From: Leucoraja ocellata
Lineage: Eukaryota
DNA: 64,000 bases
Reading direction: 5' to 3'
Assembly: GCA_036785375.1 (NCBI GenBank)
Contig: JAWMAR010000040.1
Span: forward strand, 6,448,001-6,512,000
Positions within the stretch are counted from its first letter, which is position 1. The number at the start of each line of letters is the position of its first letter. Below are positions 5,956-41,900 of the stretch, piece by piece. The translations under genes were made by a program, and so were the position numbers. The notes under the pieces were generated by a model. That model searched no databases and was not told the DNA's origin. It was given only the letters and a program-made list of their open reading frames with translations.

Positions 5956-6093
5956 CATCGTGTGCACACCATTTTGAATGCAGACCTGGTGATTGTGATG
6001 AAGAGAGGAATTATCTTGGAATACGACACTCCCAGCATACTCTTGGAACAAAGAGATGGAACCTTTGCCTCTTTTGTACAGGCAGATAAATGA
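5956..6093 (+). CDS. ABCC8: Canonical terminal exon, SUR1/SUR2B-like ('B' exon)
   Basis: ggttttccag|CAT, phase 0. Encodes [45 protein letters not shown]; mammalian SUR1 ends ...FASFVRADK. Confidence 0.95.
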
Positions 6094-8967: not shown

Positions 8968-10212
8968 ATGCTGTCGGCCAGGAAAGAGCTGGTGGCCGAG
9001 GAGTACGTGCTGCGGCTGCAGGAGGAGGTGGTGGCACGTCCCCGCTGCCGGGAGAGGCCACGTCGGGCTCGCTTCGTCGACAAGCACGGCGCCTGCAATG
9101 TGGCGCACACCAACATCCGAGAGCAAGGCCGCTTCCTGCAGGACGTCTTCACCACGCTGGTCGACCTGAAGTGGCGGCACACGCTGCTCATCTTCACCAT
9201 GAGCTTCTTGTGCAGCTGGCTGCTGTTCGCCATGATCTGGTGGCTGTTGGCATTCGCTCACGGCGACCTGGACGACGGAGTAGGTGGAGGGGGGCCATCT
9301 CCCCCGGCCGTGCCCTGCATCACCAGCCTCCACTCCTTCACCTCGGCTTTCCTCTTCTCGGTCGAGGTGCAGGTGACCATCGGCTTCGGCGGGCGGATGA
9401 TCACCGAGGAGTGCCCGTTCGCCATCGCCGTGCTGCTGGCGCAGAACATCGTTGGGCTGGTGGTGAACGCCATCATGATGGGCTGCATCTTCATGAAGAC
9501 GTCGCAGGCGCGGCGGCGGGCCGAGACGCTCATCTTCAGTCGCTCGGCGGTGGTGGCGCCGCGGGACGGCCGCCTGTGCCTCATGTTCCGTGTGGGCGAC
9601 CTGCGCACCTCCATGATCATCGGCGCCACCGTGCGCGCGCAGCTGGTGGGGCGGGCGCGCACGGCCGAGGGGGAGGTGCAGCCGCTGCGGCAGCTCGACG
9701 TCTCATTGGACGGGCCGGCAGGGAGCGGCAGTTCCATCTTCCTGGTCTCGCCCCTCATCGTGGCGCACGTCATCGACGGCTCGAGCCCGCTCTACCGGCT
9801 AACGGCCGCCGGCCTGACGCGCGCCCGCTTCGAGCTGGTCGTCGTGCTCGAGGGCGTGGTGGAGACCACCGGCATCACCACGCAGGCGCGCACCTCCTAC
9901 CTCTCCACCGAGATCCTGTGGGGGCACCGCTTCGTCCCCGTCGTCTGCGAGGAGGACGGACGCTACTCGGTCGACTACTCCAAGTTCGGCAACACTGTCA
10001 AAGTGTCCACGCCGCCGCTCGGCGCCCGGCAGCTGGAGATGGAGCAGGCCGAGGCGAGGCACCGGCCCCAGGTCAGCCTGGGGGGCGACGAGATGGAAGA
10101 GGCGGAGGAGGAGGGGGTGGAGATAGAGGGGGAGGGAAAGGTGGTCAACTTCGATATCTCGCCCGGCGTTAGGAGGAGAAAGAGCTCGGTGTTTCAGAGC
10201 GACTGTTTGTGA
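8968..10212 (+). CDS. KCNJ11: ATP-sensitive inward rectifier K+ channel Kir6.2, 414 aa, single coding exon
   Basis: ccaccATG start; TIGFGGR Kir6 filter; [49 protein letters not shown] and FDISP. The intronless CDS and DVFTT/EDGRY residues favour Kir6.2 over Kir6.1. Confidence 0.93.
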
Positions 10213-10269
10213 TCCGCAACCCACCTTCCCTTTTTCCCCAGGGTGAGGGGAGGAGAGAAGATCTCTTCA

Positions 10270-11822: not shown

Positions 11823-11829
11823 AGGACAA

Positions 11830-22815: not shown

Positions 22816-22822
22816 AAACTAA

Positions 22823-23364
22823 AGGGGCTGTCCTGCTTGGGCAACTTAATCCGCGAGTTCTGGCGAGTTTGCCCTCGACTCATACTCGCAGCATGGTCGA
22901 CATGAGGTCCTAGGAGGTCTTTGTAACTATCCTTCATGCTCGAGAGTAGTCCCCGTGTACCCGAGGCCTCAGCTAGGTCGTGGCATATTTTTGGAAAAAT
23001 GCCTGCGAGTAAAAAAAGCTCGCCATGGAAAAAAAAAAAAAAAAAAAAAATCGGTACTTTTTTTACTCGGTTTAGTCGTAGTAGGTCGGCATGTTAGTCG
23101 TAGGTAACCGAGGGTAGTCAAAGGTAATCAAAGGTAGTCAAAGGTAATCGTAGATAGGCTGATAATCGAAGGGAGGTCAAAGGGAGGTCAAAAGAGATCA
23201 TCTTCACTCTCCACTATTCGGTGTCCAATTTTCCCGAAGTTATTCGTAGCTAGTCATAGCTAGTCGAAGCTAGTCTTCAACATAGTCGAAGGAGATCTTC
23301 AACACGACATTTTTTCAAACTCTCCTAAACTCACCAATTAGGTCGCCCAAGTGGGACTGCCCCA
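22823..23364. mobile_element. PIF/Harbinger-like MITE
   Basis: Imperfect TIRs AGGGGCTGTCCTGCTTGGGCAAC ... GTCGCCCAAGTGGGACTGCCCCA, flanked by TAA (22820-22822 and 23365-23367); short internal tandem repeats. Confidence 0.75.
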
Positions 23365-24174
23365 TAATGGTAGACAAAAGTGCTGGAGAAACTCAGCGGG
23401 TGCAGCAGCATCTATGGAGCAAAGGAAATATGCAACTTTTCAGGCCGAAACCCTTCTTCAGACCCTTCTGCCCCTTAATGGTCTTCCTAGATCTTCTATA
23501 ACATCATCAAGGATTTGTTCCACCTCGCTCAATCTTTCTTCTCCCTGTTCCCGTCAGGCAAAAGGTACAGACATTTGAAAATGTGCTCCATCAGACTCAG
23601 GAACAGCATCTTCCCCTCTGTTCTCAAGTTTCCATATGCAAGGGTGCTGTCCGATTAAAAAAAAAATGTGGATGCATATATGGATAGCAGGTGTTATTTA
23701 GAGGGCTTCGGGCCAATTGCAGGCATTTTTTATTAACCCAATATGACAACTTGGTCAAGGTGGGCCGAATGACCTATGCTATACAGCTCTATGACACAAC
23801 ATTCAGGTTGACTTTAAATTGCCATTGAGGCAGGCCTACCAAGTTACCAACACTCTTTTCAAATTTCATAATTTTAAATGGAAATGAATTTTCCTCAGAA
23901 TATGGGCAATATCAAGTTCTCCCTGAAAGCTATTACAGTAAGTAATGTTACTTTGTGTAAATTAAGTAATATGCACCTGTTATTTATGGTAACTTTACAC
24001 TGGAGAAAATTTGTAAATGGTATAAAGCCCACAAAGGCCAACTCTTATATTGAGATTTTAAACAGAATATACTTCCATGCAGATTCCAATATAAATTCTC
24101 AGAGTCCTGTAATGCCACATTATTTGTTGGAATAATTCTGCACAGGCTGGTGTGATTAAAGATATAAGGTAAAT

Positions 24175-24485
24175 TTAAACCCGCAGTTTGAATGACTTCT
24201 CAATAATTTCATTGGTCTTATCATGTCGAACTTCACAAACATAATTTACCGAATTTTTTTCCATGAGAATTGGCAGCTTTGTGATTGTCGAGTACAGTCC
24301 ATTTTTGTCTATTTCGGGCTTTCCCATAATTTGATAATCCGTGCAATCGTTCGATGTCTTGTACCAAACAACTTCTATATCCTTTGGGCAAAAATGTTCA
24401 ATCCTGCAACCAAGAGTATATTTTCCACCTATTTTGAGTCGATCATTGTCACAGTTGGTAAAACTTGATACTTTAGGAGCCACAG
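24175..24485 (-). CDS. NCR3LG1: B7-H6-like gene exon 10: terminal IgC1 domain (6th after the TM) with stop
   Basis: tttttccacag|CT acceptor, phase 1. AVAPKV...LGCRIEHFCPKDIEVVWY...NGLYSTITKL...YVCEVRH...FKLRV*. Confidence 0.85.
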
Positions 24486-25990
24486 CTGTGGAAAAATTGA
24501 AATCACAAATATCAAATACAAGTTAAAGTCATGCTTACTTTATGTTCCAAAGTGACCTGGGCAAACAAAATAATGTTATTCCGCTTGGTTAGCTTACAAC
24601 CCAATGGTGATGAACAGTGGAGACTTCAATTTTTGGTATTTAACCTTACAAACACCCCTTGCCCTTTTTACTGCCCTCACCTTTTTTTTTAAACCCTCTC
24701 TACCCTGTGCCCCACCTGGATGCACACCCGATTCTTCCTTTCCCCTTCTCTTTGCCCTCATCCACCCACACTACTTCCTCTGGCTTCAAATTTCATGCCT
24801 CTTCTATCCTCTTTTGAAACTTTTTTTTTTGTTGCATTTCTGGCCTTTGTCCAACCATCTGACAATCAAAAACCTCACCTATATCGATCTATCACATGCC
24901 AGGCTTTGTCCTACCCCCACCTCGCTTCTGGCTTTCCCCCGCCCCCCATGGTGCCACCCTTTTTTGCAGTGAAATCCTATTTCTATAGTCGGTGCCAATA
25001 ATATCAACACACAAGGCCCAAATTCAAACTAACTACCCATTACCAAACACAGAGCTGCTGCCTCAGCACCAGAAACCCAGGCTTGATCCTGACCTCAGGT
25101 GCTGTGTGTGTGTGTGGAGTTTGCACAGTACCCACGAGACTGTGTGGATTTCCTCCAGGTGCTCCCGTTTTCTCCCATACCCCAAAGAAGTGTCGGGCCC
25201 CACCTTTGATTAGACCATAGAACAGTACAGCATAGAGACAGGCCGTTCGACCTACAATGTTTGTGCTGAACATTATGCAAAATGAACATAATTTCCTCTG
25301 CCTGCATGTTATCCATATCCCTCCATTCCCTGTATATCCATGTGCCTATCGAATAGTCTCTGAAAGGCCACTAACATATCTGCCTCCACCACCACTCCAG
25401 GCAGCATATTCAAGGCACCCTCTACTCATTGTGTAAAAAACCTTGCCTCGCACATTAAACTTTGCCCCTCTCACTTTAAAGCTATGTATGCTCGTCTTTA
25501 ACTGTCGAACTTATCTTTGCCTCTCATAATTTTATACACCGGCATTTCTCACAGGTCTCCCTGCAATTTCCAGTTCCAAAGAAAACACTAGGGTTACCCA
25601 ACCTCGCTTGACAGCTACTACCCACTAATCCAGGCATCATTCTGGTAAGCCTCTTCTAGACACCTGGTAGCAGTGCTGCCTTACAGTGCCAGAGACCTGG
25701 GTCTGATCCTGACTCTAGGTGCTGTCTGTACGGAGTTTGCTCGTTCTCCCCGTTATTGCATGGGTTTTCTCCGGGTGCTCCGATTTCCACCCGCATTCCA
25801 AAGACGTACAGATTTGTAGGTTACTTGGCTTTGGCAAGAATTGTAAATTGTCCCTAGTGTGTATGATAATGTTAGTGTACGAGGTGATCATTGGTCGGCC
25901 GGATCCTGTGGGCTGTTTCTGCGCTGTATCTCTAAACTAAACTAGACTAATCACCCAAAAATAAGAGGTTTCGACTATAAATCTGTGTAA

Positions 25991-26190
25991 AGGGCCTGTC
26001 CCACTTGGGTGTTATTTCCGCGTTATTTATGCAACATCATTTATGCGTCACGACGCAACATCATTTACGTGTCACGTCCGTGTCGTGACGCTCGCATGGC
26101 ATGCATTACGGGCGCATTGCGCGATGGTGAGACGTGGTGGCGTAGGCAGTGAAGCTCGTGACGCCCCAGGATTTTGGGATTCACTTAAGG
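25991..26190. mobile_element. Truncated Harbinger-like MITE (left end only)
   Basis: TAA|AGGGCCTGTCCCACTTGGG, the same terminus type as 22823; CpG-rich internal repeats; no right TIR seen. Confidence 0.55.
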
Positions 26191-27060
26191 CGATGAACAA
26201 CAAAAGCTAAACAAAAATACAAAGTGCTGGAGTAACAGCGTGTCAGGCTGCATCTCTGGAAGACATGGATAAACAATGTTTTAGTTTGGGACCCTTCTTC
26301 ATACTGACTTTAGCAGGGGTAGTGAAAGCTAGACAAGTGAGAGTGGGACAAAGCCTTGCAAATGATAGGTAGATTCAGGTGAGAGTTTTTCATTGGCAGA
26401 TGTGTGGACAAAGGCCAGAGATGGAAAGTAGATAAAAGGGTGTTTGTGTCAACAACAAAAGCCATTCTCCTGCACGCATTGTAAAACCTTTACTGTCTTC
26501 AATGTTGGTTATATACAAATTTAGAATAGGCGGGCGGCCCAGGATTTTAACACCACGGGGCCTGGTGTCCGAGTTCGCCAATGTCAGCGGTCCGGCCAGC
26601 GCGGCCTGAGAACTTTGGACATTGCAGTCTTCAGGGAGGAAGTGGCCGCTTCAGTCCAGGCCGCTGAAGAATGTTCACCCGACGCCGATGATCCAGCTTC
26701 GCGGCAGAGGGCCTGAGAAAATCGAGTTGGCTGAGGAGGCCACATATAGACCCCGACCTCGGGTGGACTATGAGGGGGAGAGCTGGATATTTTTAGTGCC
26801 TTCCCTCACAGTGAATTCTGCTGTGGGGGGACGTTTCATGTTGATTTCTATAGTGTACTGTTCTGTGTCTTTTTTTCTTTTTCTCTTTTTTGTTTTTGTA
26901 TATATTGACATTTGGTCTGTTCTATTAATTTAATCAAACTCTGTAAAGCACTTTGGTTCAAATACTGGTTTTGTTGAAAAGTGCTATATAAATAAAGATT
27001 ATTATTATTATTATTATTATTAAAATATAGTTAAACAAATCATTTTCACAACACACTCAC

Positions 27061-27372
27061 CTTTTAGGGGCAGTTGAATACGCCTTTTGAATGCTTCATT
27101 ATTATAACGATCTTTACACAGAAAGATTAACTCTCTTTCAAAGTCTTCCGCGGTTACTAAAAATTTAAGGCAACTCTCTACTTTGTAATTGTTGTCACCG
27201 GTACTCACAAAACCTGAATTAGTTACTCCACTTTTCACAGGCTCAGATCCTCTATACCATTCAAAAATGAAATCCTTTCTTAAGAGGCCATGTACAGAAC
27301 AAGATAGGGATAAATGTTCACCAAACCATGGGATCTCTGGCACCATTTTGAAGTCTGAAATTGTTGGTGAGC
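27061..27372 (-). CDS. NCR3LG1: B7-H6-like gene exon 9: divergent IgC1 (5th after the TM)
   Basis: cattatag|GC ... AAAG|gtgagt, 312 nt, phase 1-1. LSLSCSVHG..FEWYR..DNNYKVESCLKF..ELIFLCKD. Confidence 0.85.
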
Positions 27373-29230
27373 CTATAATGAAAAGAAAATGTATTTAAAA
27401 CATAGAATAGTACAGCACAGGAACAGGCCCTTCGGCCAACCAATGTCTGTGCCAATCATGATACCAAGCCCAATTCTTATCTGCCTGCACGTGATCCTTC
27501 CATTCCCTGTATATCCATGTGACTATTTAAAAGCCTCTTAAACACCATTATTTCCACTGCCCACCATCACCCCCGGCGCCCCCACTGCATTCCAGGCACC
27601 CAGGTTAGGCTTAAAGGGATGACAATTTTATTTCACTCAGAGGGTTGACCGTATCTGGAATGAGCTGCCAGAGGAAGCTATAGAAGCGGATGTAATTATA
27701 ACTTTTAAAAGATATTGGATAGATGTATGGAGAGGAAAATTTTTCAGAGGGCTATGAACCAAATGCAGGAAAATGGGATTTTCCCAGACTGCCAAATTAG
27801 TCAGCATGGACAAGGCAGGCCGAAGGGCCTGTTTCTATTCTTGCCAACTCTACGACTCTGACTAAACGGTGGATGCGTGACAAGATAGGTCTGATCCACT
27901 TTGTATTTCATCCTCAGGTTTGCTAGAAAAACTAACGTCAATGACTGTCCCATTCAATCCAGTGGAAATAGGTAAATTCAGCATTTTAATTTTAGTGTTA
28001 ATTATTTGTTAGAGTTTTAATGTGTTAATATTTGTTTACGCATATATTTAAAGTCTTTTTATAACCGTTACATATTTCAGACAAATTTAAAGGTACTCTA
28101 CATCCACCGAGCTGTCACTAGCTGCCAAGATGTCCTGGGAGGCTCGAGTGCATCGTGGATAGGGCTGATGATATCGTAATCTGATGGTCAGTGTTACAAT
28201 GACGCAATACTTTGTAAACTGTGAATATATAATAAAAGCTCCTTGTTGAAGGGGAAACATTGTTTCCTGGATCCAAGAAATCAGGAAGCAATGCGGAGAT
28301 CTGTAACAGTACAAGATGACGAGGGGGCATGGATAAAGTGGATTCACAGTCATTTTACAAAGTTGTCACTCCTCCACCATTTAATCATAGTCAAAGTGCT
28401 GTACAGCATGGAAACAGGCCCTTCGGCTAGTCCTGTTTGCCCGCATTTCTCTACGTACAGCATGGCCTACCAGCTCCTCTAAAGAGTTAAAAACTACATT
28501 TTAACATTTTAATATTACAAAAAAATTACAAATGTTAAAAGAATCAAATTAATATCATTAGTCGGTCAGGCTCTTAATCAGCATATAGGACGATAATCTG
28601 CTTTCGACACCAAAAGCAAGAAGCAATATGTGTACCAGAACCCTTTTGTATCTAAAAAAGCATTGGTGAGACCTATGTGCAGAATGAAACACACTGCCCT
28701 CTCTGCACAACCAAGAAAAAGGGGCACCCATACAAAATCGACAGTCACAGAGAACCTGCAAACTCCACACGCAGCCAGTACCCGAGGTCAGGATTAAAGC
28801 TGGGTCTCTGGCCCTGTGAGGCAGCAGCTCTAGCAGCTATGCCACTGTACTGCCCAAAAATTGAATTATTCCTTTTCAAAACAATAGATATTTTAAAAAT
28901 ACAATATTAGAAAATTACAGCAAAGTCCCACGTTACAGCCTTTTGTGTGAATTCTGTAATTCACCTTTACAAAATTCATAAATCACTACCCAAAATCGTT
29001 AAAATGAAATAAAATTTGCTCTCATGCAATTTATGAGGAAAGAAAAACAAAATCTATTATGGGAAAACACCATAAGGGCCGTTTTCTGTGTTACCAGTAT
29101 GATGTTATTGCACTCAAATAACTCTCAATTAACTTTTTCAGGTCTTAGAATCTGCTCTTGCTGATTATGATTTCCAAATAACAGCTGGAATTCATTTTAC
29201 CACAGCTTGATAAAGAGAACCTTAACTCAC

Positions 29231-29557
29231 CTTTAAGAAGTAACCGGAAGCATTGCTTCTGAGGTTTGGTGGAAGATTTTGAATGATAAACTTCAACCAT
29301 GTATTGATGTTGATGATCATCAGTGCTTGGACTCAAGGTTAATTTGGTGACTTTGCTGCAGAGACTGCGTTCATTCATCAATTCTTCGTTAGCGATTCCA
29401 TATTTTGCATCTTCATTTATTCTCACTTCATCCCTAAACCAGTCAATTTGAATACTCGCTGGATAAAAGTCCATTATTTCACAGGACAAAGTCAATGTCT
29501 TCCCGACTTCAGGGTTCGGAGGATCACAAGTAATCTTTTTTACTTTGGGAGAAGATA
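29231..29557 (-). CDS. NCR3LG1: B7-H6-like gene exon 8: IgC1 (4th after the TM), F-strand Cys absent
   Basis: ttcttacag|TA ... AAAG|gtgagt, 327 nt, phase 1-1. LTLSCEIMDFYPASIQIDWFR...QYMVEVYH. Confidence 0.87.
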
Positions 29558-30886
29558 CTGTAAGAAAGAGGAATAAGAAAAGCTGAAATGCATCTTAAAA
29601 CATTGTTTTAGGTAATGTTCCAGAAAAGGTTTTGTACAATGAGGATGTAATCGGTGTTTGTAAGTTGACTAGAAATAACAATTGGAAAGCTGGAAAGGGT
29701 GCGGAGAAGATTTACGAAGAGTATATACGAAGAAGATTATAGCCTAGGACACGAGGGCCTGAGCTATAGAGAGAGGTTGGGCAGGCTAGGACTTTATTCC
29801 TTGGAGTACATGAGGTTGACGGGTGATCTTATAGAGGTGTATAAGATCATGAGAGGAATAGATAGGGTAAATGCACAGTCGTCTAGCTAGGGTAGGGGAA
29901 TCAAGATCCACAGGACATAGGTCTGTGAGCGGGGGCAAAATGGGTGCTCCATTTCCTCACACTATCCAAAGACGTACAGGTTTGCACGTTAAATGTCTTC
30001 TGTAAATTGTAAATTGTCCCCTGTGTGTAGGATAGTGTTAGTTTATGGGGGTGATCGCTGGTTGGCGCGGACTTGGTGGGCCAAAGGGCCTGTTTCCATG
30101 CTGTACCTTTAAAGACTAAACGTTTGGCACTGACATTGTGGGCCGAAGGTCCTGTTGCTGTGCTGAACTGTTCTAAAGCAATAACTCAGCAGATCAGGAT
30201 CTCTGGAGAAAATGAATAGGTGACGTTCCGGGTCGGAACTCTTCGTCGGACCTGAAACGTCACCTATTCTTTTTCTTCAGTGATGCTGCTTGATCTGCTA
30301 AGTTATTCCAACATTTTGTGCCTATCTTCGTTATAAACCAGCATCTGCAGTTCCTTCCTACACACTATACTGCTCTATATTGAATGTATGGAACTGTGTC
30401 CCCTCCCCATACACACACCCACATCTAACCCCCTCCCCCCCCCCCCCCAGCTAGTCACCTGTCAGGGTGAAGCCACTGAACAGCACTTTAAATTGTTCCT
30501 ATGTTTGGGATCGATGGTTCTGTCTGAATGTTTGTTTTAGTTCTATTTTAGAGATGATAATTTTTAAACTTGTAAGTATTTATTTCTGTTTTTATTAATT
30601 GCACTGATGACAAAACTGATGAGAAACAATTTTTTGTTTCTTCTGTGTATGCAAGTACTCAGTGAAATGACAATAAAGTGAATACTGAATACTGTTCTAA
30701 GTTCTCCAGCATGAGGAATTACAACATTTAAACTCAATGTTTTTGCCAACTAGAAGTAAATGTACAGGTAAAGGTTATGATATGACGGAAAGCTGACAAG
30801 ATAACACAATGAAATTAGAACACAATTTAATAATGTCCTTATTGTCTAAATAGCAGAAACAATCTTTGAAAGGAGAGGAAGCATAC

Positions 30887-31195
30887 CTAAATTCTCGGGA
30901 ACATATTCCGCAAACTTTTGCTTGGGAAGGCTCTCATGTGTGACCAAGCAAAGATATTTACTCTTTTTGTCTGATAACGTTGGAATTGTGGTGCAAGTCG
31001 TGGTGATTTCATACAACTTCTCCGGATTCTCGATCAATTCAGATGTGTCATTCCCTTTTATGGCTTTCTCATCTTTGAACCATAAGACAGAAATCTCTTT
31101 AGGATAAAACGAGTGCACTTTGCAGGAGAGAGTCATTTCTTTGTCAATTTCTGGATTCACTGGTTCGCTCCGGATGGTATCAAGTGTAGGAAATG
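30887..31195 (-). CDS. NCR3LG1: B7-H6-like gene exon 7: IgC1 (3rd after the TM)
   Basis: atttgcag|CA ... TTAG|gtatgc, 309 nt, phase 1-1. LSCKVHSFYPKEISVLWFK...YLCLVTHESL. Confidence 0.88.
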
Positions 31196-31650
31196 CTGCA
31201 AATCAGAAAATAGAATTTTACTACATTTGTAAACACAAAATATAGTCATGATGTTAAAACATTGGTGCTGCTGACTGAGAAGTGGTCACCGAGGACTGGG
31301 GGAGGTGGAGAAAGGCCCTCGAGGTGTGTATGAAGCAGAGGACATAGGTTTAAGGTGAGAGGGGAAAGATTTAATGGGAAGCTGAGGGATGACATTTCCA
31401 CACTGAGGGTGGTGGGTATAAAGTCATAGGAGCAGAATTGGGCCATTTGGCCCATCGAGTCTACTCCACCATTCAATCATGGCTGATCTGTTTTTCCCTC
31501 TCAACTCCATTCTCCTGCCTTCTACCCCATGAATGGTGGAAGGCCATTTTAATGCCTCCGACTGAAATATATCATAATAATGTCAACAAAGCTACGACAA
31601 TTACACGTTTGATGGTGAATGCGCAATCAAAGACTTTAAGTTTGAGTTAC

Positions 31651-32013
31651 CTTTCACTTCCAGCTTAACCCGTTTCTCGGCTTGGTGTGTCAAGCTAACG
31701 TGATTCACTTCACATAAATATTCTTTTCCATCATTTTCTTGAATTGATGCAATGAAAGTGAGCATGCTGTAGACGCTGTAAGTGTGGTCTGGATAGGTAA
31801 ACTCACGCAGACAATGGGAATACCGGCCCACCGTGTTTTTTGCCTCATTTTCCTCGGTGTGGTCCAGCAAAAGAGATTTTACCCCATTTATTCTTTCATA
31901 CCAACTGATTGTTAACAGACGTGGCGTGAAAAAGCTTATTGGACAAGTCAGCATCACTGAAGTGTTGTGACGCACAACAGGAGGTGCGATTATGTTCCCC
32001 AACTTAGGAGCAA
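31651..32013 (-). CDS. NCR3LG1: B7-H6-like gene exon 6: IgC1 (2nd after the TM)
   Basis: ttctccttag|TT ... AAAG|gtaact, 363 nt, phase 1-1. LTCPISFFTPRLLTISWY...DHTYSVYSML...YLCEVNHVSL. Confidence 0.88.
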
Positions 32014-33946
32014 CTAAGGAGAAAAACACAAAGTAAAATCAGCTTAACATTTGCAATCTTAAGGAAAAGATGCTGTGTGTCTATCGCATAGCAGTGACAA
32101 AATGCAATGGTCATTTACAATTCAGAAATAAACTTGCGCATATTAGGCTTGTAACATTTTAATTTCTGTAGCTGCAGCCCAGTCCATCACACAAACCAGA
32201 TTACCCACCAGTGTCTCCATCTGCACTTCATGCTGACTCAGGAAAGCAGCTGACATAATCAAAGACTTGTCCCATGCAGGTCATTCCTTCTTCTCAAGGT
32301 ACAGAAGCTTGAAAGCACACACCACCAGACTCAGGAACAGCTTCTACCCCTCTGTTATCAGGCTTCAGAATGGTTCTTCCACAAGTTAGGATACTGTCCG
32401 ATTCACCTCTATTCCATAACGGACATTGGACTTTGTCTATGGAACAGATGCGCTACAATGCAGAGAACTATATTCTGCACTCTGTATCATCCCCTTTGCT
32501 CTACCTATTGTACTTGAGTTTGAATTGATTGTATTTATGTGCAGTATTATATGAACTGATTGGACAGCATGCAAAACAAAGCTTTTCACTGTACCTCGGT
32601 ACACCTGACAATAAGCCTAAACCTATCTACTCCCTATCTCATTTTCTTCCGATACTCATGCTGTATCCTTAATTTCTCATTCACTTGCAGTAATTTTCAG
32701 ACTCGATAGTGCTGTTTCAAAGCAAATTTAGAGAAGGATAATCTTATCAAAGGCAGTCGGGAATTTGGGCATAAGATCCGCCATTCAGCAAACAAGGAAA
32801 TCCCAACATTAACCAGTTTTTGGATTTAATTATATCTTATCTCCATTAATGTACCTTCTTGCCATAAACTGTTTCCAACTTTATAACTATATCTCAAAAG
32901 TTTTTCCCTGCCTGTAAAATGCTGTGGAGTTTCCCAAAAATTGTAAAAGATGCCATCCATGTAAATATCCTAACACAAATATATTAATCTCAGTGTTTAA
33001 CAGTTTCAAACTGATCTTGTCCCAACAACAATTTTTCATGGGGATTCCCAGTCCACAAATCCTTTCCAGTACACTGCTACAATTCCTCCCCAGTCCTCCA
33101 GACACTACAGAAGTGATCCCAGGTGCATTTTTAAATACTGAAGTATTTAAACTGAAGGTGCCTTCTGTTTTTCTTTGTCACATCTTTTAGTCCCACATCT
33201 TTGAATCCATACCAGTAACTATTCACTACAATTGCCCCTAAAGAAAGCTTTTAAATAAATTATCTTATTGCAGTGGATATACTTAAAACCAAACCATCTA
33301 TAAGACGAAGGCAAATAATGTAGAACTATTACATAACTCAACGATGCATCACTTTAACTGTGAAAGTAGCATTTTCCAAATGTTTTTTGCATAGTTTGCT
33401 GTTCACAGTGAATAATCACAAACTCTGTGAAAAGTAAAGGACCTCCGTTCTATAAATTTAAAGACTGTAAATTCTAGGACATACTATCAGAAATTAATGA
33501 ATCAAGAAACCATATGGGTGATCCACAACTTGGATAAATTGAAGAAGAATACTGTAGTCTCCCGACACTGACTTAAAACAAACGGAGACAAAGTGCTGGA
33601 ATAACTCAGCGGGCCAGGCAGCATCTTTGGAGAACATGGATAAATAATATTTCGGGACGGATCCCCTCTTCAGCCAAGTATAGGTGTTGTTTCAGGATGG
33701 AACCCTTCCAACCTTTCTGGTCGGGACCCTTTTACCAAAATGGGTAGGACACGTTTCAGATCGGAACACTTCTTCATTTGTTTTGGGTCAGAAAGTTTCC
33801 TGATGGAAGAAGGGTCCATACTCTAAACATCAGAAATACTGCCCAGCCCGCTGAGTTAGTCTAGTACTTTATGTCATTCTTTTTTGTAACCAGCAATTGC
33901 AGTTTCTTGTTTCTACGCAATTACTTAATATCTGTAAAATGCTTAC

Positions 33947-34357
33947 TTGCATCAACTTGTAAACAGGTGCGTTTCTCCTGAGTTCCATTTGGATACGACA
34001 CTCTACATATGATTACTGCTTTATTGTCCATTAAGTCAGGATAAATCTCAAGAGTGCTGGACAAGCTCTGTGTTCCATCATCATGTACGACAAAACTACT
34101 TTGTCTGACTTTCCAATTAACGTCAGTTGCATTCTCCTTTCCTATTTCTGTTATCTCCTTTGCTTTGCTAAACCTTATAATCTCCTGGTTCCTTTTGCTT
34201 TCACCAATGAAGGACTCTTTAGCATCATTCCTTCTCCTCAAATACCAGCCAACAGAAATGACATCAGGTCGAAATCCAGACACGTGGCATGTAATCTCTG
34301 CAGGTTGTTGATGGATAAATCGAGCAGGCATCTGAAGATCGCATACATTGGGTGGAA
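33947..34357 (-). CDS. NCR3LG1: B7-H6-like gene exon 5: IgC1 with a long insertion (1st after the TM)
   Basis: ttattctcag|TT ... GCAA|gtaagc, 411 nt, phase 1-1. VPPNV..ITCHVSGFRPDVISVGWY...DGTQSLSSTL...IICRVSY. Confidence 0.87.
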
Positions 34358-36151
34358 CTGAGAATAAATGAAGGAAAATTAGAAATTTAAAGATGGATTA
34401 TTCTAAATATGGAGTCATAGTCAGCGTGGAAACCGGCGCTTCGGCCCAACTTGCCCACGCCAATCAACATGCCCCATCTACACTAGTCCCACCTGCCTGC
34501 TTTTTGCCCATATCCTTCTAAACCTATCCATGTACCTCTCTAAATGTTTCTTAAACATTGTCGTAATACCTGCTTCAACTACCTTCTCCAGCAGCTCTTT
34601 TTGTCCCTCAGGTCCCTATTAAATCTTTCCCCCCTCACCTTAATACTATGTCCTCTTGTTTCTCAATTCCCCTACTCTGGGCCAAAGACTCAGTGCATTT
34701 GTGCAAATTAGCTTTGTCTTTTCCTGAAAATTCCTTGCGGTACCACACTAGTCACTGCCTGTCATTCTGAAGTTAGAAGACAATGTTTAATGAATACAAA
34801 CATTTGTATCAAACTGCACCTACAATTTCATGGCACTAAGTGCATGGAGGATATTAATTCTTATATAAGAGGTATCAGCATTTCTGACTGATGAATATCA
34901 AATTAAACCAATACATAGTCATAGAACAGCATAGCACAGGAACAGGCCTTTGACCCACAAAGTCTGTGCCCATCATAATGTTGTTAAACTAATCTCCTCT
35001 GCTTGCACATGATCCATATCCTTCCATTCACTGCATGTCTATGTGCCTATCTAAAAATCTCTAAAATTAAAATGATCGGTTCTGCCTCCACCACCATCCC
35101 TGGCAGCGGGTTCCAGGTACCCATAATAAACTGTGTAAAATAAACTGGCCCCGCATATATATTTAAAACTTTGCCCCTTTCACCTTAAATCTCTGCCCTC
35201 TAGTCTTTGACATTTCCATCCAGGGAAAAAGGTTCCAACTGTCTCTCCTTTCTATAATTTTTTATACCTCTATCCGGTCTCCCGTATCTTCTGGTGATTC
35301 TAGAGAAAACAATCCAAGTCTATCCCATCTCTCCTTGCAGCTAAAACCCTCTAATCCAGGCATTTTTTTGGTGAACCTTTTCTGCACCCTTGCCTAAGCC
35401 TCCACATCCTTCCTGTAATGGGCAATCAGAATCACATGCAATGCTCTAAATGTGGCCTAACCAAAGTCCTATAAATCCTGACTCTTATACGCCATGCCCC
35501 GACCAGTGAAGGCAAGCATTTCCTATGCCTTTGTTACCACTCCATCTACTTGTGTTACCACTTTCACAGAGCAATGGACTTGAAATGGAATAAGAACATC
35601 AATTTAAATAATCATTAACAAATATCTGCGAAATACGGTATGTGGGACCAAACTTAACCAACAATATCATTGATCATTTATAGTTAGTAGACTAATCATT
35701 TACAGTATAGTTGGCAATGCCAAAATTGTCACAAGTTTGTACAGCACAGGTTAACTAGAAAATTATACAATTAGGTTGGCACAGTGGTGCAGTGTGTAGA
35801 GCTGTTGCCTCACAGCGCCAGAACCCCGGGGTTGATCCTAACCTCGGGGCTGTCTGTGTGGAGTTTACACGGTCTCTCTGCGACAGCGTGGGTTTTCTCC
35901 AGGTCCTGCGGTTTCCTCCCACATCCCAAAGGCGTGCGGGTTTTTGGGTTATTTGTCCTCTTAAAATTGGCTCTAGCGTGTAGGGAGTGATTGAGAAAGT
36001 GGGATAACATAGAACTAGTGTGAACAGATGATCGATGGTTGGCATGAACTCGGTGGGCTGAAGGCAAAAAGATTTAATTGTACCCCAGCCAAATAACTTA
36101 TGATTCTTTGAATTGTTTTCTATAAATTAATCCACAGTAGATAAGCATTAC

Positions 36152-36268
36152 CTTTATAAATGTACCGCATGTACAGGTAAATTCCAGCTGCTAACAGCAT
36201 TACAGAAAAAATTACACTTCCAATGATGCTTCCAACTATTGAGCTTTTGGACAGATGAATTTCTGCTT
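36152..36268 (-). CDS. NCR3LG1: B7-H6-like gene exon 4: transmembrane helix
   Basis: gtattacag|AA ... AAAG|gtaatg, 117 nt, phase 1-1. EAEIHLSKSSIVGSIIGSVIFSVMLLAAGIYLYMRYIYK: hydrophobic span followed by basic residues. Confidence 0.85.
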
Positions 36269-38078
36269 CTGTAATACAAAAGTGCAAAAAAAATGACAAG
36301 ATTACAAGACGTACCTTTAGAAAAGAGATGAGGAGGAATTTATTTAGACAGAGGGTGGTAAATCTATGGAATTCATTGCCACAGATGGCAGTGTAGGCCA
36401 AGTCATTGGGTATTTTTAGTGGAGATTGACAGGTTCTTGATTAGTAAAGACATTAAAGGTTATGGAGAGAAGGCAGTTGAATGGGGTTGAGGTGGAATGG
36501 GGTTGAGAGGTTCAGCGCTAGCTCAGTCATGATTGATTGAATGGCAGAGTAGACTCAACGGGCAGAATGGCGTAATTCTGCTCCTATAACTTATGAACTG
36601 ATGAAGATGGTACAGAACGAACCGCTCACATCTACTTTTAAAAGCCTGAACATGTTTGGGAAAAGACTCGGAAGTGACCAAGAGGAAATTTTTTTCCACA
36701 TGGGAGAATTTAAAAGCCATTGATAAAAGGTAACAAGAAATAAAGAGAAGAGAAGAAAATTATTTACTTAGGATGTGAAACTTACAGTTTATAAAAGTAA
36801 AAGTACAATTAGCCCTTAAGAGATGCAATTATCAAAAAAGTTATTGAAGTTATAAATACTCAACACTTTGAGAAGATAATTATAGTTACAGATGTATTTA
36901 GCAGAAAAAGGTTCATGGACAGATTTAACAGAAAGAAGTTTGGGTTAGCATAATTGTTTTATAAAAATACTCAGTTTAAAAAGCCTTTATCAAACTATTT
37001 AAAAAAAAAAAAAAAATCATACTTGTTTTATCTTCAGCTTATAGCGGTGTAGAAAATCCCGAGGCTAATTGAAAGGGTGAATGTTCAGAGTCTTTTACCC
37101 AGGGTAGGAAATCAAGAACCAGTGCACACCATAGTTTAAGGTGAGAGGGAAAGATTTAATAGGATCCTGAGGGGCAACTTTTTTATTCATAGGGTGGTGG
37201 CTGTATGGAATGAGCTGTACGAGGAGGTAGCTGATGCAGATATAATAACATTTAACAGATCTTTGGACAAATACTTGCATGGGAAAGGGTCAGAGAGATA
37301 AGGACCAAATGTGGGCCAATGGGACAAACTTGATGGGGATTTTGATGGTATAGACTTTGGGCCGAATGGCCCGTTTCCTTGCTGTACAACTCTATGACTA
37401 CCCCACGTTACAACTTTCCACCCATCCCAAAAGTCACTTCTGATCCCAAGTTTAAGGTGAGGGGGGAAAGATTTAATTAAAACCCGATTACCTTTTTTTA
37501 CACAGTGGTGGGTATATGGAACGAGTTGCAGGAGGAGGTAGTTGAGGCAGGTACTATCACAACATTTAAGAGACATTTGGATATGTACGTGGAGAGGAAA
37601 GGGTTAGAGTGGTATATGCCAAACGCGGGCAAATGGCTTTGCTGAGATGGGGCATCTTAGTCGGCACGAATGAATTGGGCTGAAGGGCCTGTTTTCGTGC
37701 TGGATTACTCCGTGACTACCCCTCAACATGAACGTAACCAAAAGTTTGAAATTTCAACTTTTCATTAAAAAATAGAAAGAACACTACAGCGCAGCGGTAG
37801 AGTTGCTGTCTTACACCGTCTGTGTCCCAGGTTCGATCCTGACTACAGGTGCTGTCTGTACAGAGTTTGTACGTTCTCCCCGTGACAGCGTGGGTTTCCT
37901 CCGGGTTCTCCGGTTTTGTCCCACATTCCAGACATGTGAGTTTGTAAGTTAATTGGCCTCTTTAAATTGCCCCTAATATGTAGGATAGAATTAGTGTATG
38001 GGAAATAGTTGGTCAGCACAGACTCATTGGGCCGAAGGGCCTGTTTCCACACTATCTCCAAAACTAAAACTAACTGAC

Positions 38079-38405
38079 CTTTCAAAGTCACTGCAGCTTT
38101 CGCAGTGTATGGCTCTGGAAATGCCTTGTGTGTCACCCGGCATTCAAAACTGCTGCCAATATCTTCTACACGAGGTTCCAGTCGAACTTCAGTAGTCACG
38201 TTACATGTCCCATCAGGATTTTTGATTGGAGGGGCGATGCAGATATCAGTTAACAGCTTTGTTTTCTTTTGTGACGGGTTTGACTGAAACCAATCCGTTT
38301 TGCATTCGCAAGGATAATATCCATTTAACTGACAACCTAAGATCATCTCTCCTCCAGTGCCAACCTCCACAAGCTTCTCAGAAACAATAGTTACTGTGGG
38401 TCGTG
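38079..38405 (-). CDS. NCR3LG1: B7-H6-like gene exon 3: extracellular IgC1
   Basis: tttttatag|CA ... AAAG|gtcagt, 327 nt. GCQLNGYYP..PPIKNPDGTCNVTTEVRL..EDIGSSFECRVTH resembles recalled human B7-H6 GPTIKNMDGTFNVTS..EDPGTVYQCVVRH. Confidence 0.88.
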
Positions 38406-39713
38406 CTATAAAAAAAATATATATATTAATGTCTCAACGGCTATACTTAACATAGAAAACATACTGTTGGGTCACATAAAGACTTGGTTTGGGAACAGCT
38501 CTTGCATGAGCCCAGTTTAGCTTAGTTTAGTAATACAGCGTGGATGCTCCCATGCAACGCAATCAACCTATAACATTTGATATCTTTCAGTTCATAGTTT
38601 CTACCTGATATGAGAGTTTCCAATAACATTTGTTCTTCCATCAAATATCCAATAGATGTAGAATTTTGCTTTCATACTAAGGCGTTATACTAGCATGATG
38701 GAATTTGCATTAGAAGAAGGGTCTCCACCCTAAAGGTCACCCATGAAGAAGGGTCTTGACCCGAAATGTCGCCCATTCCTTCTCTTCAGAGATGCTGCCT
38801 GTCCCGCTGAGTTACTCCAGCATTTTGTGTCTTACCATGGAATTTGCAAAACTATTTTCTCTGAAATACAAACTTGTACCCATAATCATTTGGTCTACAT
38901 CCTCTAAGAAACTACCATTAAGCTGGAAAGAGTGCAGAGAAGACGAAGGAGGATTTTGCCAGGGCTCAAGGGCCTGAGCTAGAGGGAGCATTTGGGCAGG
39001 CTAGGACTTTATTTCTTGGAGCGCAGAAGGCTGAGAGGTGATCTAATAGTCGTGTATAAGATCATGAGGGGAATACATAGGGTGAAAGCACAGAGTATTT
39101 TATCCAGAATAGGGGAATCAAGAGCCAGAGGACATAGTTTTAACGTGGGAAGGGAAAGATTTAAATGACAAAAACTTTCACACAGAGGGTGGTAGGTATA
39201 TGGAATGAGCTGCCAGAGGAGGTAGTTGAGGTAGGTACTACAACAAAATTTAAAAGCATTTGGACAGGTACATGGATAGGAAACGTTAAGACTGATATGT
39301 GCCAAATATGGGCAGATAGGACATATTGATCAGCATGGACCATTTGGACTGAATGGCCTGTTTCCGTGCTATATGACTATGAATAAAGTCCTAGCCTGCC
39401 CAACCTCTCCTGGTAGCTCAAATCCTCGAGTCCTGACAACATGCTTCTAAATCTTCTCGCCAGCTTAATGGCTTCCTTCCTACAGTAAGAAGACTGAAAA
39501 AGTTTGGATATAAGTTTGTATATCGGAGAAAATAATTTTGCAAACTCCATCAAGCCAGAATAAAGCTTTGGTTTGACAGCAAGTGGGGCATATTGGTCGG
39601 CAGCAACGAGTTGGACCAAAAGGCCTGTTTCCGCACTGAATGACTACTGCTCTATATATATTATTTTATCGCAATATTAAATATTTACAGTGAAGTGCAA
39701 GAAATCTCCTTAC

Positions 39714-40064
39714 CTAAAACTTCAAGCTTTACCGTCAGAGAAGCTTTGTCATTTGGTGGAATAACAACTTCACAGCGATATTCCCCCAAATGTTTTAACG
39801 TAACATGTCTCAGGAAAAGTGACATGTTTCCATCTAAAATTGAGTTTTTAGACAGCTCTGCTTCCTCCCACAGATTTGTTATCTGTCCGTTAGAATACAT
39901 AAAGATATTGAATTCTTCAGTTCCACCGGTAAAAACCCATAAAACACCTAAATTATTTGGGTTCAAAGTAATCGCACTGAGATTAGCAATCTCACACTCG
40001 AGAAGTCCATTTTCGTACAGGATGAGTTCCGCTGGACTTTTGCTTGCTTTCAACGTCAACTGTC
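39714..40064 (-). CDS. NCR3LG1: B7-H6-like gene exon 2: IgV domain
   Basis: aatttacag|GA ... TTAG|gtaagg, 351 nt. LECEI..LGVLW..GNMSLFLRHV..LGEYRCEVVIPP..VKLEV resembles recalled human B7-H6 GDASLRL..AGEYRCEVVVTP..VQLEV. Convergent with KCNJ11 as in human. Confidence 0.88.
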
Positions 40065-40889
40065 CTGTAAATTGGAAAAAAAAGTACATATTAGAATATT
40101 AAAAATATTTTAAATACATTGAAATATGTATATATTTTTTACAAATATACATATTAAAATATGTTAAAATATTTGCATGTTAGAATGCACCCTAGAAAAA
40201 TGATCTAAACGAGGATGGGTGGGACTAGCTTAGATGGGGTACGTTGGTCAGCATGGACAAGGTGGGTCGACAGGCCTGATTCCATGCTGTGCGGCTCTAT
40301 GACTGACTCCTTACTTTGTAGCCATATCCCCTTGATCATGCCTCTCCCACCAGAGAAAACATCTCAAGTACTATCTTGTCAAAGACACCCCCCACCAAGG
40401 ATCTTAAATAGTACAGTACAAGATCGTGCCACCCATTCTACATAAAACAGTATAGCAGAGAAATAGGCCCTTCAGCCCACAATGTCTATGCTGAGTTTAG
40501 AGGCTTTAAACTTTAGAGATACAATGCAGAAATAGGCTCTTTGGCCCACCGAGTCAGTGCAGACCAGCTATAATCCCGTACACAAGCACTATCCTACTCA
40601 CTAGGAACAATTTTGGCAGAAAGTTAGTTAACCTACAAACTTGTACTTTGAGTGTGGGGGGAAACCGGAATATCCGGGGAAACCCACGCAGTCACAGGGA
40701 GAACGTACAACCTCCTTGTAGGCAGCACCCGATGTCAGGAACAAACCACGATCTCTGGCGCTGTAAGGCAGCAAGTCAACTCTACCATTGCGCCATTGCG
40801 CCGCCCTGACAATTACACATAAAACAGCACAGTGGAGGAACAGAGCTGTCAGCCCGTAATATTTGTGCTATTATACATAAAACAGTATA

Positions 40890-41567
40890 GGGTGATTTCA
40901 CTAAAGGTCACTGGAGCGTAGATCCGCACCCACGTGACCAAAAATCTCAAGTGGAGGACATGCTAGACTTCCGGTACATGTTAGTGGATGGGAAAACACG
41001 CACTTTCCCACCAGTTAAAAACATAGAAAACGGCCAGGTTTTGATCTGCAATTTATTGTGCCAGTCGGGGTGACCGTGAGGCACAGCTACCTAGATTTAC
41101 AGGAAAAAAAGATAGAAACTAAGGTAAATTAAAGAGGGAGCTGAAGGTACCAATCCAGCGGAAGTGAACAGCGGACATTTGCCGTGGAGATTTAAAGGTC
41201 CAAAATATCGGGAATTATCGCGTTTGCTCGCTGAATTTCATCAAAAGTAAGGCATTATTGACTTACTTTTGATGAAATTCAGCGAGCAAACGCGATAATT
41301 CACGATATTTTGGACTTTTAAACCTTTAAATCTTAGTTTCTATCTTTTTTTTTTCTGTAACTCTAGCTAGCTGTGCCTCACGGTAACCCCGACTGGCACA
41401 ATAAATTGCAGATCAAAACCTGGCCGTTTTTTATGTTTTTAACGGGTGGGAAAGTGCGTGTTTTCCCATCCACTAACATGTACTGGAAGTCTAGCATGTC
41501 CTCCACTTGATATTTTTGGTCACGTGGGTGCGGATCTACGCTCCAGTGACCTTTAGTGAAATCACCC
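40890..41567. mobile_element. Foldback (palindromic) non-autonomous DNA element in intron 1 of the B7-H6-like gene
   Basis: GGGTGATTTCACTAAAGGTCACTGGAGCG ... CGCTCCAGTGACCTTTAGTGAAATCACCC. The arms pair up to a ~10-nt central loop near 41252-41261. TATA on both flanks. Confidence 0.92.
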
Positions 41568-41833
41568 TATAGCCCAGGATCAGGCCCTTTGGCCCACAAT
41601 ATCATAGGAACACGCCTTTCGGCCTACCAGAATCACGTTAATCAGCAGAGGAACATGCCCTTCGGCCCACAATGTCCGTGCCGACCATGATGCCAGGCTA
41701 AACCCCCCGAGGCAGCGACCAGCCCCCGGGAAAGGTAGGTCGCGCACCCCGGCACCAGGCTCCCCATTCTGCGACCCGAGCGGCCTCTCGGCCCGCGTAC
41801 CCTAGCCCAGCGCAGCACAGCCACGGCTCTGAC

Positions 41834-41900
41834 CTGAATGTGGCGTCAACATCACCAACAGGAGCAGGAGTGGCCGCAGTGGGTTCCCCAGCCACCCCAT
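41834..41900 (-). CDS. NCR3LG1: B7-H6-like gene exon 1: signal peptide
   Basis: gaccATGG Kozak context in a CpG-rich region. MGWLGNPLRPLLLLLVMLTPHS-G|gtcaga, 67 nt, phase 1, joins exon 2 in frame. Not in the ORF track. Confidence 0.85.

What the first reader, a model, noticed from the sequence alone, without database searches (positions are those of the whole stretch)
24175..41900. B7-H6-like receptor with six Ig C1 domains after its transmembrane helix (predicted cytoplasmic Ig array)
Seen: ten minus-strand exons with GT-AG sites, all joined in phase 1, giving one open 2895-nt CDS (964 aa): leader, IgV, IgC1, TM (ending RYIYK), then six IgC1 exons and a stop. I found no second TM, leader or stop among them. 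Known: C1-set domains are typically extracellular (Ig, TCR, MHC, B7, tapasin), and human B7-H6, the NKp30 ligand, has a non-Ig cytoplasmic tail. Inference: type I topology puts about 675 aa of C1 domains in the cytosol, possibly as a scaffold or sensor. All six frames remain open amid decayed repeats, which suggests selection. I cannot tell whether similar predicted amphibian or shark proteins have been described.
Basis: partly seen in the sequence, partly recalled or inferred. Interest (0 to 1): 0.92.

Follow-up and report, generated by a model that had tools for sequence, protein, structure and literature searches.

The report
B7-H6 gene with post-membrane Ig tail
This skate gene is the counterpart of the human NK-cell ligand B7-H6, but after its membrane anchor it carries six antibody-type (C1) domains that most likely sit inside the cell, a layout shared by many non-mammalian vertebrates.

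Summary
Ten minus-strand exons with GT-AG sites, all phase 1, give a 2895-nt frame: leader, IgV, IgC1, one TM helix, six C1-set exons, then a stop.

A spliced contig from a public run joins the TM exon to the next exon exactly at 36152|34357.

The gene lies tail-to-tail with a Kir6.2/KCNJ11 gene. Its V exon's best solved relatives are human NCR3LG1, so it is a B7-H6 orthologue.

The layout is not a local oddity. 71 of 120 representative homologues have one TM at residue 200-360 followed by 2-14 C1-like domains. They span chimaera, sharks, rays, bichir, coelacanth, lungfish, amphibians and an alligator; turtles and lizards come from a second search.

Post-TM domains keep the fold's Trp (380/412) but both canonical Cys in only 186/403. 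The ectodomain C1 keeps them in 70/71, and arrays ahead of a C-terminal TM in 74/74. Glycosylation sequons fall to chance level and the TM flanks follow positive-inside. This favours a cytosolic C1 array.

One caecilian model skips the TM exon, so a secreted isoform is possible. I found no published description; three key papers were not held.

The parts
41834..41900 (-). Leader exon (coding part): ATG at 41900, hydrophobic signal peptide, phase-1 GT donor after 41834
39714..40064 (-). IgV exon (B7-H6-like V domain)
   Evidence: PF07686; top PDB hits are NCR3LG1. X3 record 11 joins 39714 to 38405.
38079..38405 (-). Ectodomain IgC1 exon
   Evidence: (PF07654)
36152..36268 (-). Connecting peptide plus the single transmembrane helix, ending RYIYK
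   Evidence: KD 2.26, the only convincing TM; the contig continues from 36152 into 34357.
33947..34357 (-). Post-TM C1-set exon c1 (136 aa, long charged insert between the C and E strands)
   Evidence: spliced to the TM exon in X1 record 2; 120 homologues.
31651..32013 (-). Post-TM C1-set exon c2
30887..31195 (-). Post-TM C1-set exon c3 (strongest C1-set match, 53 bits)
29231..29557 (-). Post-TM C1-set exon c4; the second canonical Cys is replaced (YMVEV)
27061..27372 (-). Post-TM C1-set exon c5
24175..24485 (-). Post-TM C1-set exon c6, ending in the stop TAA (24177-24175)
23729..23734 (-). AATAAA 440 nt after the stop; candidate polyadenylation signal (inferred)
8968..10212 (+). Context: intronless Kir6.2/KCNJ11-type gene, tail-to-tail with the B7-H6-like gene (synteny marker)
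   Evidence: 99% identical to Leucoraja erinacea KCNJ11-like

Best explanation
This is the skate orthologue of NCR3LG1/B7-H6. It encodes a type I membrane protein: signal peptide, an IgV-IgC1 ectodomain of the NKp30-ligand type, one transmembrane helix, and a C-terminal region of about 675 aa made of six old, mutually divergent C1-set Ig domains. The protein has a cleavable leader and a single stop-transfer helix with a basic C-terminal flank, and nothing hydrophobic follows. The six domains therefore lie in the cytosol of the TM-containing isoform. That much is shown at the level of gene structure, RNA splicing and comparative sequence. The rest is inferred. I propose that the tail folds without disulfides, like muscle Ig domains, and acts as a protein-binding scaffold or sensor. 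It would couple the state of the cell to display, clustering or turnover of the NK-cell ligand, or carry reverse signals, much as the cytosolic B30.2 domain does for the B7-related butyrophilins. Because every exon is phase 1, skipping the TM exon would give a secreted eight-Ig form. That form may exist as a second product.
For: Structure: ten phase-1 exons form one open frame.

RNA: X1 record 2, a 277-nt contig, lies on 36152-36257 with 0 differences and on 34187-34357 with 4 differences, which is the exact TM->c1 splice. X3 record 11 shows the V->C1 splice. Other contigs stop at the exon ends 33947, 38079 and 39714. Unique intron bins (35530-35729, 36730-36929) have depth 0-0.6 in all four runs. 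The c1, C1 and V exon bins have similar low depth (about 1-7).

Topology: there is only one TM in the gene. Of 71 family members, 70 have no second hydrophobic segment. Mean net charge is -0.39 on the N-side flank and +2.76 on the C-side flank, and the C-side is higher in 64 of 71.

Comparative: 71 of 120 representatives share the V-C1-TM-(C1)n layout. They come from chimaera, sharks, rays, bichir/reedfish, coelacanth, lungfish, frogs, salamanders, a caecilian and an alligator. Gharial, turtle and squamate models come from a second search and were not in that count.

Disulfide: both canonical Cys are kept in 186 of 403 post-TM domains. The membrane-proximal ectodomain C1 keeps them in 70 of 71. 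Domains of six proteins whose array precedes a C-terminal TM keep them in 74 of 74. The Trp is kept in 380 of 412 post-TM domains.

Glycosylation: the ectodomains hold 254 sequons against 133 expected, the post-TM regions 321 against 286.

Orthology of each domain: tblastn places Pristiophorus, Callorhinchus and Alligator proteins colinearly on the window exons. Post-TM domains are as conserved as V and C1 at depth; for elephant shark, V 29% and C1 29% against c2 35%, c3 37%, c4 38%.

B7-H6 identity. That fits the same chromosome or scaffold, not necessarily adjacency.
Against: No experiment shows the topology; I had hydropathy and charge only, with no DeepTMHMM or SignalP.

The junction rests on one contig of depth 5.4. 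Its run is labelled RNA only as a guess, and its organism label differs from that of the best DNA holders. In one search, 529 joints and 10343 pieces were not shown, so TM-exon skipping in this species is not excluded.

A caecilian model (P0128) equals P0129 minus exactly the 37-aa TM exon. One TM-less B7-H6-like representative (P0020) also exists.

In the 25-protein alignment, c3 keeps both Cys in all rows and c2 nearly so. That would suit an oxidising compartment.

The representatives are related to one another, so the Fisher p (3e-16) overstates the independence of the evidence.

The proposed function has no direct evidence.
Confidence: 0.72

Rival explanations
1. The form that matters for the six C1 domains is a secreted one. 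The TM exon is skipped, which is frame-neutral because every exon is phase 1. This gives a soluble V-C1-(C1)6 molecule with all Ig domains outside the cell, comparable to a non-rearranging antibody-like protein. In the TM-containing isoform the tail would just come along.
For: Caecilian isoform X3 lacks exactly the TM exon. P0020 has a signal peptide, no TM and a B7-H6-like array. c3 keeps both Cys in 25 of 25 aligned proteins and c2 nearly so. C1-set domains are otherwise known only outside the cell (established knowledge). UrIg and UrIg2 show that V plus many C1 domains exist in elasmobranchs (PMC12227049, passages read).
Against: The only junction seen in this species includes the TM exon. 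The TM exon has a strong acceptor and donor and is present in 71 of 120 representatives. Post-TM domains have lost one or both canonical Cys in 217 of 403 cases, against 0 of 74 in truly extracellular arrays run through the same pipeline. Their sequons are at chance level.
Confidence: 0.18
2. The long frame is a gene-model artefact. Exons 5-10 would belong to another transcript or gene, and the real B7-H6 message would end soon after the TM exon.
For: An ATTAAA lies 73 nt into the intron after the TM exon, and read-through would stop after 9 codons. Most homologues are automatic predictions.
Against: A spliced contig joins TM to c1. No leader or hydrophobic start lies between 36152 and 34357. 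c1 depth is similar to V and C1 depth in four runs. The same colinear layout appears in dozens of species. It also appears in Callorhinchus V9K7L7, which I recall is transcript-derived. A 3507-nt Logan contig encodes 778 aa of tail domains without interruption.
Confidence: 0.04
3. The tail is translated but is functionless, decaying baggage left over from an ancestral extracellular array.
For: Canonical Cys are often lost. c1 evolves faster than the ectodomain C1: 45% against 76% identity to Pristiophorus.
Against: Six frames stay open amid repeats. Each domain has a colinear counterpart in Pristiophorus and elephant shark, and four of the six have one in alligator. Trp is kept in 380 of 412 domains. 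Each domain has its own conserved signature in the 25-protein alignment. The only indel seen between the runs and the window in c1 is an in-frame 3-nt insertion.
Confidence: 0.06

Closest known systems
Human NCR3LG1 / B7-H6 (ligand of NKp30)
   Same: Leader, IgV, IgC1, single TM. The V exon's three best solved relatives are B7-H6 chains 6yjp, 3pv6 and 4zso. The C1 exon also hits them. The gene lies beside KCNJ11; in human, NCR3LG1 is a neighbour in the ABCC8/KCNJ11 domain (PMC8065166, passages).
   Different: The human tail is short and non-Ig, with predicted ITIM, SH2 and SH3 motifs (PMC7654602, passages; its gag-like origin is recalled). Here the tail is six C1-set domains, about 675 aa.
Butyrophilins (B7-related V-C-TM proteins with a cytosolic B30.2 sensor domain)
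   Same: A B7-type ectodomain is coupled through one TM to a large folded cytosolic module. This is the analogy behind the proposed inside-out role (recalled knowledge).
   Different: No PRY/SPRY match in any exon. The cytosolic module here is an Ig array, not B30.2.
UrIg / UrIg2 of elasmobranchs
   Same: Non-rearranging V followed by many C1-type domains (nurse shark UrIg2: VJ plus nine C1). UrIg2 chain 9dmx is among the PDB hits of c3 (PMC12227049, abstract and passages).
   Different: In UrIg2 the TM and cytoplasmic part come after all the C domains, and the gene is linked to IgH/TCR-alpha-delta; UrIg is MHC-linked. Here the TM sits after the second Ig domain and the gene is beside KCNJ11.
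Intracellular Ig-domain proteins (titin, obscurin, MyBP-C, filamin)
   Same: Ig folds that work in the reducing cytosol as scaffolds without disulfides (recalled; obscurin paper seen only in the listing).
   Different: Those are I-set or filamin-type domains in soluble proteins. Here the best Pfam family for all six domains is C1-set; I-set scores 23.1 bits in c4, below its 23.7 cut-off. They are also tethered to a membrane receptor.
SIRP family, Ig heavy chains, MHC class I alpha-3
   Same: These are the nearest solved C1-set relatives of c3: an antibody light chain (7fjs) first, then IgA1 heavy chain, SIRP-gamma, SIRP-alpha and MHC class I.
   Different: All of these domains are extracellular and disulfide-bonded.

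Membership tests
NCR3LG1 / B7-H6 | Leader, V-set, C1-set, single TM, in that order | tested here: met
NCR3LG1 / B7-H6 | V domain closer to B7-H6 than to other IgSF V domains | tested here: met
   the top 3 of 9 PDB hits are NCR3LG1 (E about 3e-5); the next hit is contactin at 1.6e-3. This is a weak absolute score.
NCR3LG1 / B7-H6 | Conserved position next to KCNJ11 and a SUR gene | tested here: met
   The Kir ORF at 8968-10212 matches Kir6.2 (E 2.9e-162) and is named KCNJ11-like. The human gene order and orientation are recalled; that the genes are neighbours is from PMC8065166. The SUR exons score higher with ABCC9 than with ABCC8 structures, which is left open.
NCR3LG1 / B7-H6 | Binds NKp30 | not testable with these tools
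   Needs a binding assay; no NKp30 gene was looked for.
C1-set Ig domain (PF07654) | Profile match above the gathering score for each post-TM exon | tested here: met
   34.8, 36.7, 53.1, 36.0, 30.3 and 38.5 bits against a cut-off of 21.
C1-set Ig domain (PF07654) | Canonical B-F strand Cys pair and C-strand Trp | tested here: inconclusive
   In the window the Trp is present in 6 of 6 and the Cys pair in 5 of 6 (c4 lacks the second). In the family both Cys are kept in 186 of 403 and Trp in 380 of 412.
UrIg / UrIg2 | All C1 domains ahead of the TM; linkage to MHC or to IgH/TCR-alpha-delta | tested here: not met
   The TM lies between Ig domains 2 and 3 and the locus is beside KCNJ11. Family features are taken from PMC12227049.
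Butyrophilin | Cytosolic PRY/SPRY (B30.2) domain | tested here: not met
   no such Pfam match in any exon.
Cytosolic I-set Ig proteins (titin-like) | I-set profile as the best match | tested here: not met
   C1-set is the best family for all six; I-set appears only in c4 and is below its cut-off.

The most novel reading that the evidence does not exclude
C1-set Ig domains are the hallmark module of antibodies, T-cell receptors and MHC, and are thought to work only outside the cell. In this reading they have had a second, cytosolic career for over 400 million years. The ancestral B7-H6 would be an inside-out device whose disulfide-free C1 array reads or scaffolds something in the cytoplasm (stress, infection, cytoskeleton) and so sets display of the NKp30 ligand. 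No mammal, bird or teleost long form appeared among the 49 clusters whose names I saw (28; 21), so the array may have been replaced there by short tails; that loss is not shown. On this view the cytosolic tail is the conserved core of the gene and the ectodomain its output.
Probability: 0.3. Interest if true: 0.92.

Novelty: new variant of a known kind. Interest (0 to 1): 0.78.

Why it matters
B7-H6 is a drug target and the best-defined ligand of the NK receptor NKp30, yet what its tail does is unclear. If the ancestral tail is a folded six-domain Ig array in the cytosol, two things follow.

- C1-set domains are not confined to the extracellular world, which bears on how the Ig/MHC/B7 domain toolkit arose.
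- B7-H6 may have begun as a sensor-coupled ligand, like the butyrophilins, which gives a concrete hypothesis for how cells decide to show it.

The idea can be tested directly in skate, Xenopus or reptile cells. The models sit in public databases as 'uncharacterized protein' or 'NCR3LG1 isoform X1'. I found no paper discussing the layout, but the two most likely sources could not be read.

Tried and rejected
1. The search for homologous proteins with exon c1 alone gave nothing. The tool only sees proteins of 75-238 aa for this query, so the blank says nothing.

2. I looked for a second TM or a TM exon downstream of c6, which would make the array extracellular. Nothing convincing turned up in 10200-24175, and c6 ends in a stop with no phase-1 donor.

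3. I looked for the extra terminal Ig domain seen in elephant shark, alligator and squamates. tblastn found no match for it in the window at E <= 1e-3.

4. UrIg/UrIg2 membership was rejected on TM position and locus.

5. Recent tandem duplication of one exon was rejected. The seven C1 domains are 16-28% identical to the first in the alignment, and each has its own orthologue.

6. Literature searches covered B7H6/NCR3LG1 together with shark, Xenopus, cytoplasmic, C1-set, coelacanth, lungfish and alligator, plus phrases for cytoplasmic or intracellular Ig, IgSF or C1 domains. No description of post-TM Ig domains in B7-H6 was found. Flajnik et al. 2012 (PMC3709836), Ohta and Flajnik 2015 (PMC4594805) and the UrIg 2023 paper (PMC10530332) are not held, so prior description there cannot be excluded. 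Supplements were not consulted.

8. dN/dS was not computed because no nucleotide sequence of a close relative was available.

Full report
**What is in the sequence.**
On the minus strand between 41900 and 24175 there are ten exons. Each has a pyrimidine tract and AG in front and GT behind.
- Leader: 41900-41834, an ATG followed by a hydrophobic signal peptide.
- V: 40064-39714.
- C1: 38405-38079.
- TM: 36268-36152.
- Six further exons: c1 34357-33947, c2 32013-31651, c3 31195-30887, c4 29557-29231, c5 27372-27061, c6 24485-24175.

Every internal exon begins with two bases and ends with one base of a split codon. All introns are therefore phase 1. None of the nine exon translations holds a stop, and c6 ends in TAA.

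Pfam calls the second exon V-set and the third C1-set. Each of c1-c6 is C1-set at 30-53 bits against a cut-off of 21. The fourth exon encodes the only convincing hydrophobic helix found in the three minus frames between 10200 and 42500.

Every search was done exon by exon, and the joined step is left out.

**Is the TM exon really spliced to the C1 exons?**
- One contig of run X1 (record 2, 277 nt, depth 5.4) lies on 36152-36257 without a difference. It continues directly on 34187-34357 with four differences.
- A contig of X3 joins 39714 to 38405, the V-to-C1 junction.
- Other contigs stop at the exon ends 33947, 38079 and 39714.
- The two repeat-free intron bins have depth 0-0.6 in all four runs.
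- The c1, C1 and V exon bins have similar low depth (about 1-7). The material therefore behaves as spliced RNA, and c1 is not a rare inclusion.

Limits apply. X1 and X3 are labelled RNA only as a guess. The runs carry a different coded organism label from the best DNA holders, although the exons match at 98-100%. In addition, 529 joints and 10343 pieces were not displayed, so I cannot say that TM skipping is absent.

The reads also show an in-frame 3-nt insertion in c1 at 34026 (X1 depth 5.4 of 5.4; 6 of 7 reads in X21; 4 of 4 in X22).

**What gene is it?**
- The V exon's three best solved relatives are all NCR3LG1/B7-H6 (E about 3e-5). The next hit is 50-fold weaker. The C1 exon also finds B7-H6.
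- Downstream, tail-to-tail, lies an intronless 414-aa ORF (8968-10212, plus strand). It matches Kir6.2/KCNJ11 at E 2.9e-162.
- That ORF is 99% identical to the KCNJ11-like protein of the little skate Leucoraja erinacea. The genome is therefore a skate's.
- SUR-type ABCC exons precede it.
- In human, NCR3LG1 is a neighbour in the ABCC8/KCNJ11 domain (PMC8065166, passages). The exact human order and orientation are recalled, not checked.
This fits the same chromosome or scaffold, not necessarily adjacency.
- NCBI names the reptile and Rhinophrynus proteins NCR3LG1.

**The layout is a family trait.**
A full HMMER scan with exon c1 found 120 representative proteins. Of these, 71 have exactly one hydrophobic helix at residue 200-360 with at least 250 residues after it. 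They carry 2-14 C1-like domains behind the helix.

The other 49 were left out of the counts. They comprise:
- N-terminally truncated models with the same helix-then-array order;
- six proteins with the array ahead of a C-terminal TM;
- five with a signal peptide and no TM;
- fragments.

Cluster members P0121-P0131 were also excluded, to avoid redundancy.

Named members come from Callorhinchus, Pristiophorus, Heterodontus, Pristis, Narcine, Hemitrygon, Polypterus, Erpetoichthys, Latimeria, Protopterus, several frogs, two salamanders, a caecilian and an alligator. A second search adds gharial, turtles, squamates and Xenopus tropicalis.

Further points:
- The Callorhinchus entry V9K7L7 has the TM followed by the C1 domains. 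I recall that it is transcript-derived.
- A 3507-nt Logan contig encodes 778 uninterrupted residues of tail domains.
- tblastn of the Pristiophorus protein on the window is colinear exon by exon: V 57%, C1 76%, TM 58%, c1 45%, c2 48%, c3 58%, c4 57%, c5 60%, c6 53%.
- Against elephant shark the tail domains (22-38%) are as conserved as V and C1 (29% each).
- The seven C1 domains are only 16-28% identical to the first in the alignment.

The array is therefore old, and each domain has its own lineage.

**Inside or outside?**
Direct evidence is lacking, so I asked what the sequences say.
1. Only one of the 71 members has a second hydrophobic segment. The 12 residues before the helix carry a mean net charge of -0.39 and the 12 after it +2.76. 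The C-side is the more positive in 64 of 71. This is the positive-inside pattern of a type I anchor.
2. I used one profile built from these domains and read the two canonical Cys columns.
   - Membrane-proximal ectodomain C1: both Cys kept in 70 of 71.
   - All pre-TM hits: 84 of 93.
   - Post-TM domains: 186 of 403 keep both, 110 keep one and 107 keep none.
   - The fold's Trp is kept in 380 of 412 post-TM domains.
3. As a control in the same pipeline, six representatives whose C1 array precedes a C-terminal TM keep both Cys in 74 of 74 domains.
4. N-x-S/T sequons number 254 in the ectodomains against 133 expected from shuffling. In the post-TM regions they number 321 against 286 expected. 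The extracellular control arrays have 112 against 79.
5. In the window itself, c4 lacks the second Cys and four of the six tail exons have an odd number of Cys. Sequons number 3 in the 224 ectodomain residues against 4 in the 671 tail residues.

Together these points indicate a folded Ig array that has lived without a need for disulfides or glycans, which means in the cytosol. The representatives are related, so the Fisher p of 3e-16 is not a true probability.

**What speaks against.**
- One caecilian model (P0128) is identical to P0129 minus the 37-residue TM exon.
- P0020 is a TM-less B7-H6-like protein.
- c3 keeps both Cys in all 25 aligned full-length proteins, and c2 nearly so.

A secreted eight-Ig isoform is therefore plausible as a second product. 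I give 0.18 to the view that it is the form under selection. The artefact and relic readings are weak, for the reasons listed under the rival explanations.

**How it most likely works.**
- Shown: gene structure, the splice, orthology, and a conserved layout.
- Strongly suggested: cytosolic placement of the six C1 domains in the TM isoform.
- Inferred: the tail acts as a disulfide-free scaffold or sensor that couples cell state to display or signalling of an NKp30-type ligand. This is analogous to the butyrophilin B30.2 domain and to cytosolic Ig scaffolds in muscle.

**Known or new?**
The gene family is known, and B7H6 has been reported from sharks to mammals (Flajnik et al. 2012; I know only the title from a reference list and recall the abstract). 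The long models are public, mostly as 'uncharacterized protein'.

Six full-text searches found no description of Ig domains behind the TM of B7-H6, or of cytosolic C1-set domains. The 2012 paper, the 2015 review and the UrIg 2023 paper are not held, and supplements were closed.

I therefore rate it a new variant of a known kind, with high interest. The caveat is that a specialist paper I could not read may already mention it.

As a result there is no structural model of the tail and no direct view of neighbouring genes in other species.

Noticed in passing
window 3568-3771, 5638-5754 and 5929-6093 (+): Exons of the SUR-type ABC gene upstream of the Kir gene. The two exons tested score higher with ABCC9/SUR2 structures (3.4e-27 and 5.2e-19) than with ABCC8/SUR1 (2e-23 and 1.2e-16). 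A second possible last exon lies at 5638-5754.
   Followed up: partly
window 8968-10212 (+): The Kir6.2-type ORF is 99% identical to Leucoraja erinacea KCNJ11-like isoform X1 and 92% to Rhinoraja longicauda, so the genome is a skate's. Several elasmobranchs have two KCNJ11-like entries.
   Followed up: partly
window 34026: Reads and contigs of the coded 'organism A' carry an in-frame 3-nt insertion in exon c1 relative to the window. c1 shows about 1.7% differences against about 0.3% in the V and C1 exons (table 8).
   Followed up: no
window 36078 (minus strand), 73 nt into the intron after the TM exon: An ATTAAA lies here. Read-through from the TM exon would stop after 9 codons, so a short-tailed membrane isoform by intronic polyadenylation is conceivable.
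   Followed up: no
P0138 (Callorhinchus), P0122 (Alligator), P0164 (Rhineura), P0168 (Logan contig): These orthologues carry, after the sixth tail domain, a linker (acidic in Callorhinchus) and one more Ig domain with a shared signature. tblastn finds no match for it in the window, and the Pristiophorus and Pristis proteins also end at c6.
   Followed up: partly
P0001 (Dendropsophus, 2158 aa), P0010 (Anomaloglossus, 1566 aa): Frog members are greatly expanded. Family members carry up to 14 post-TM C1-like domains, and several loci occur per genome.
   Followed up: no
window 20200-22700 (+) and the introns of the gene (for example 38730-38929, 34330-34529): Reverse-transcriptase-like ORFs lie between the Kir gene and the B7-H6-like gene. 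The introns hold interspersed repeats with very high depth in the RNA runs (52238 in one bin of X1), unrelated to the gene's own expression.
   Followed up: no
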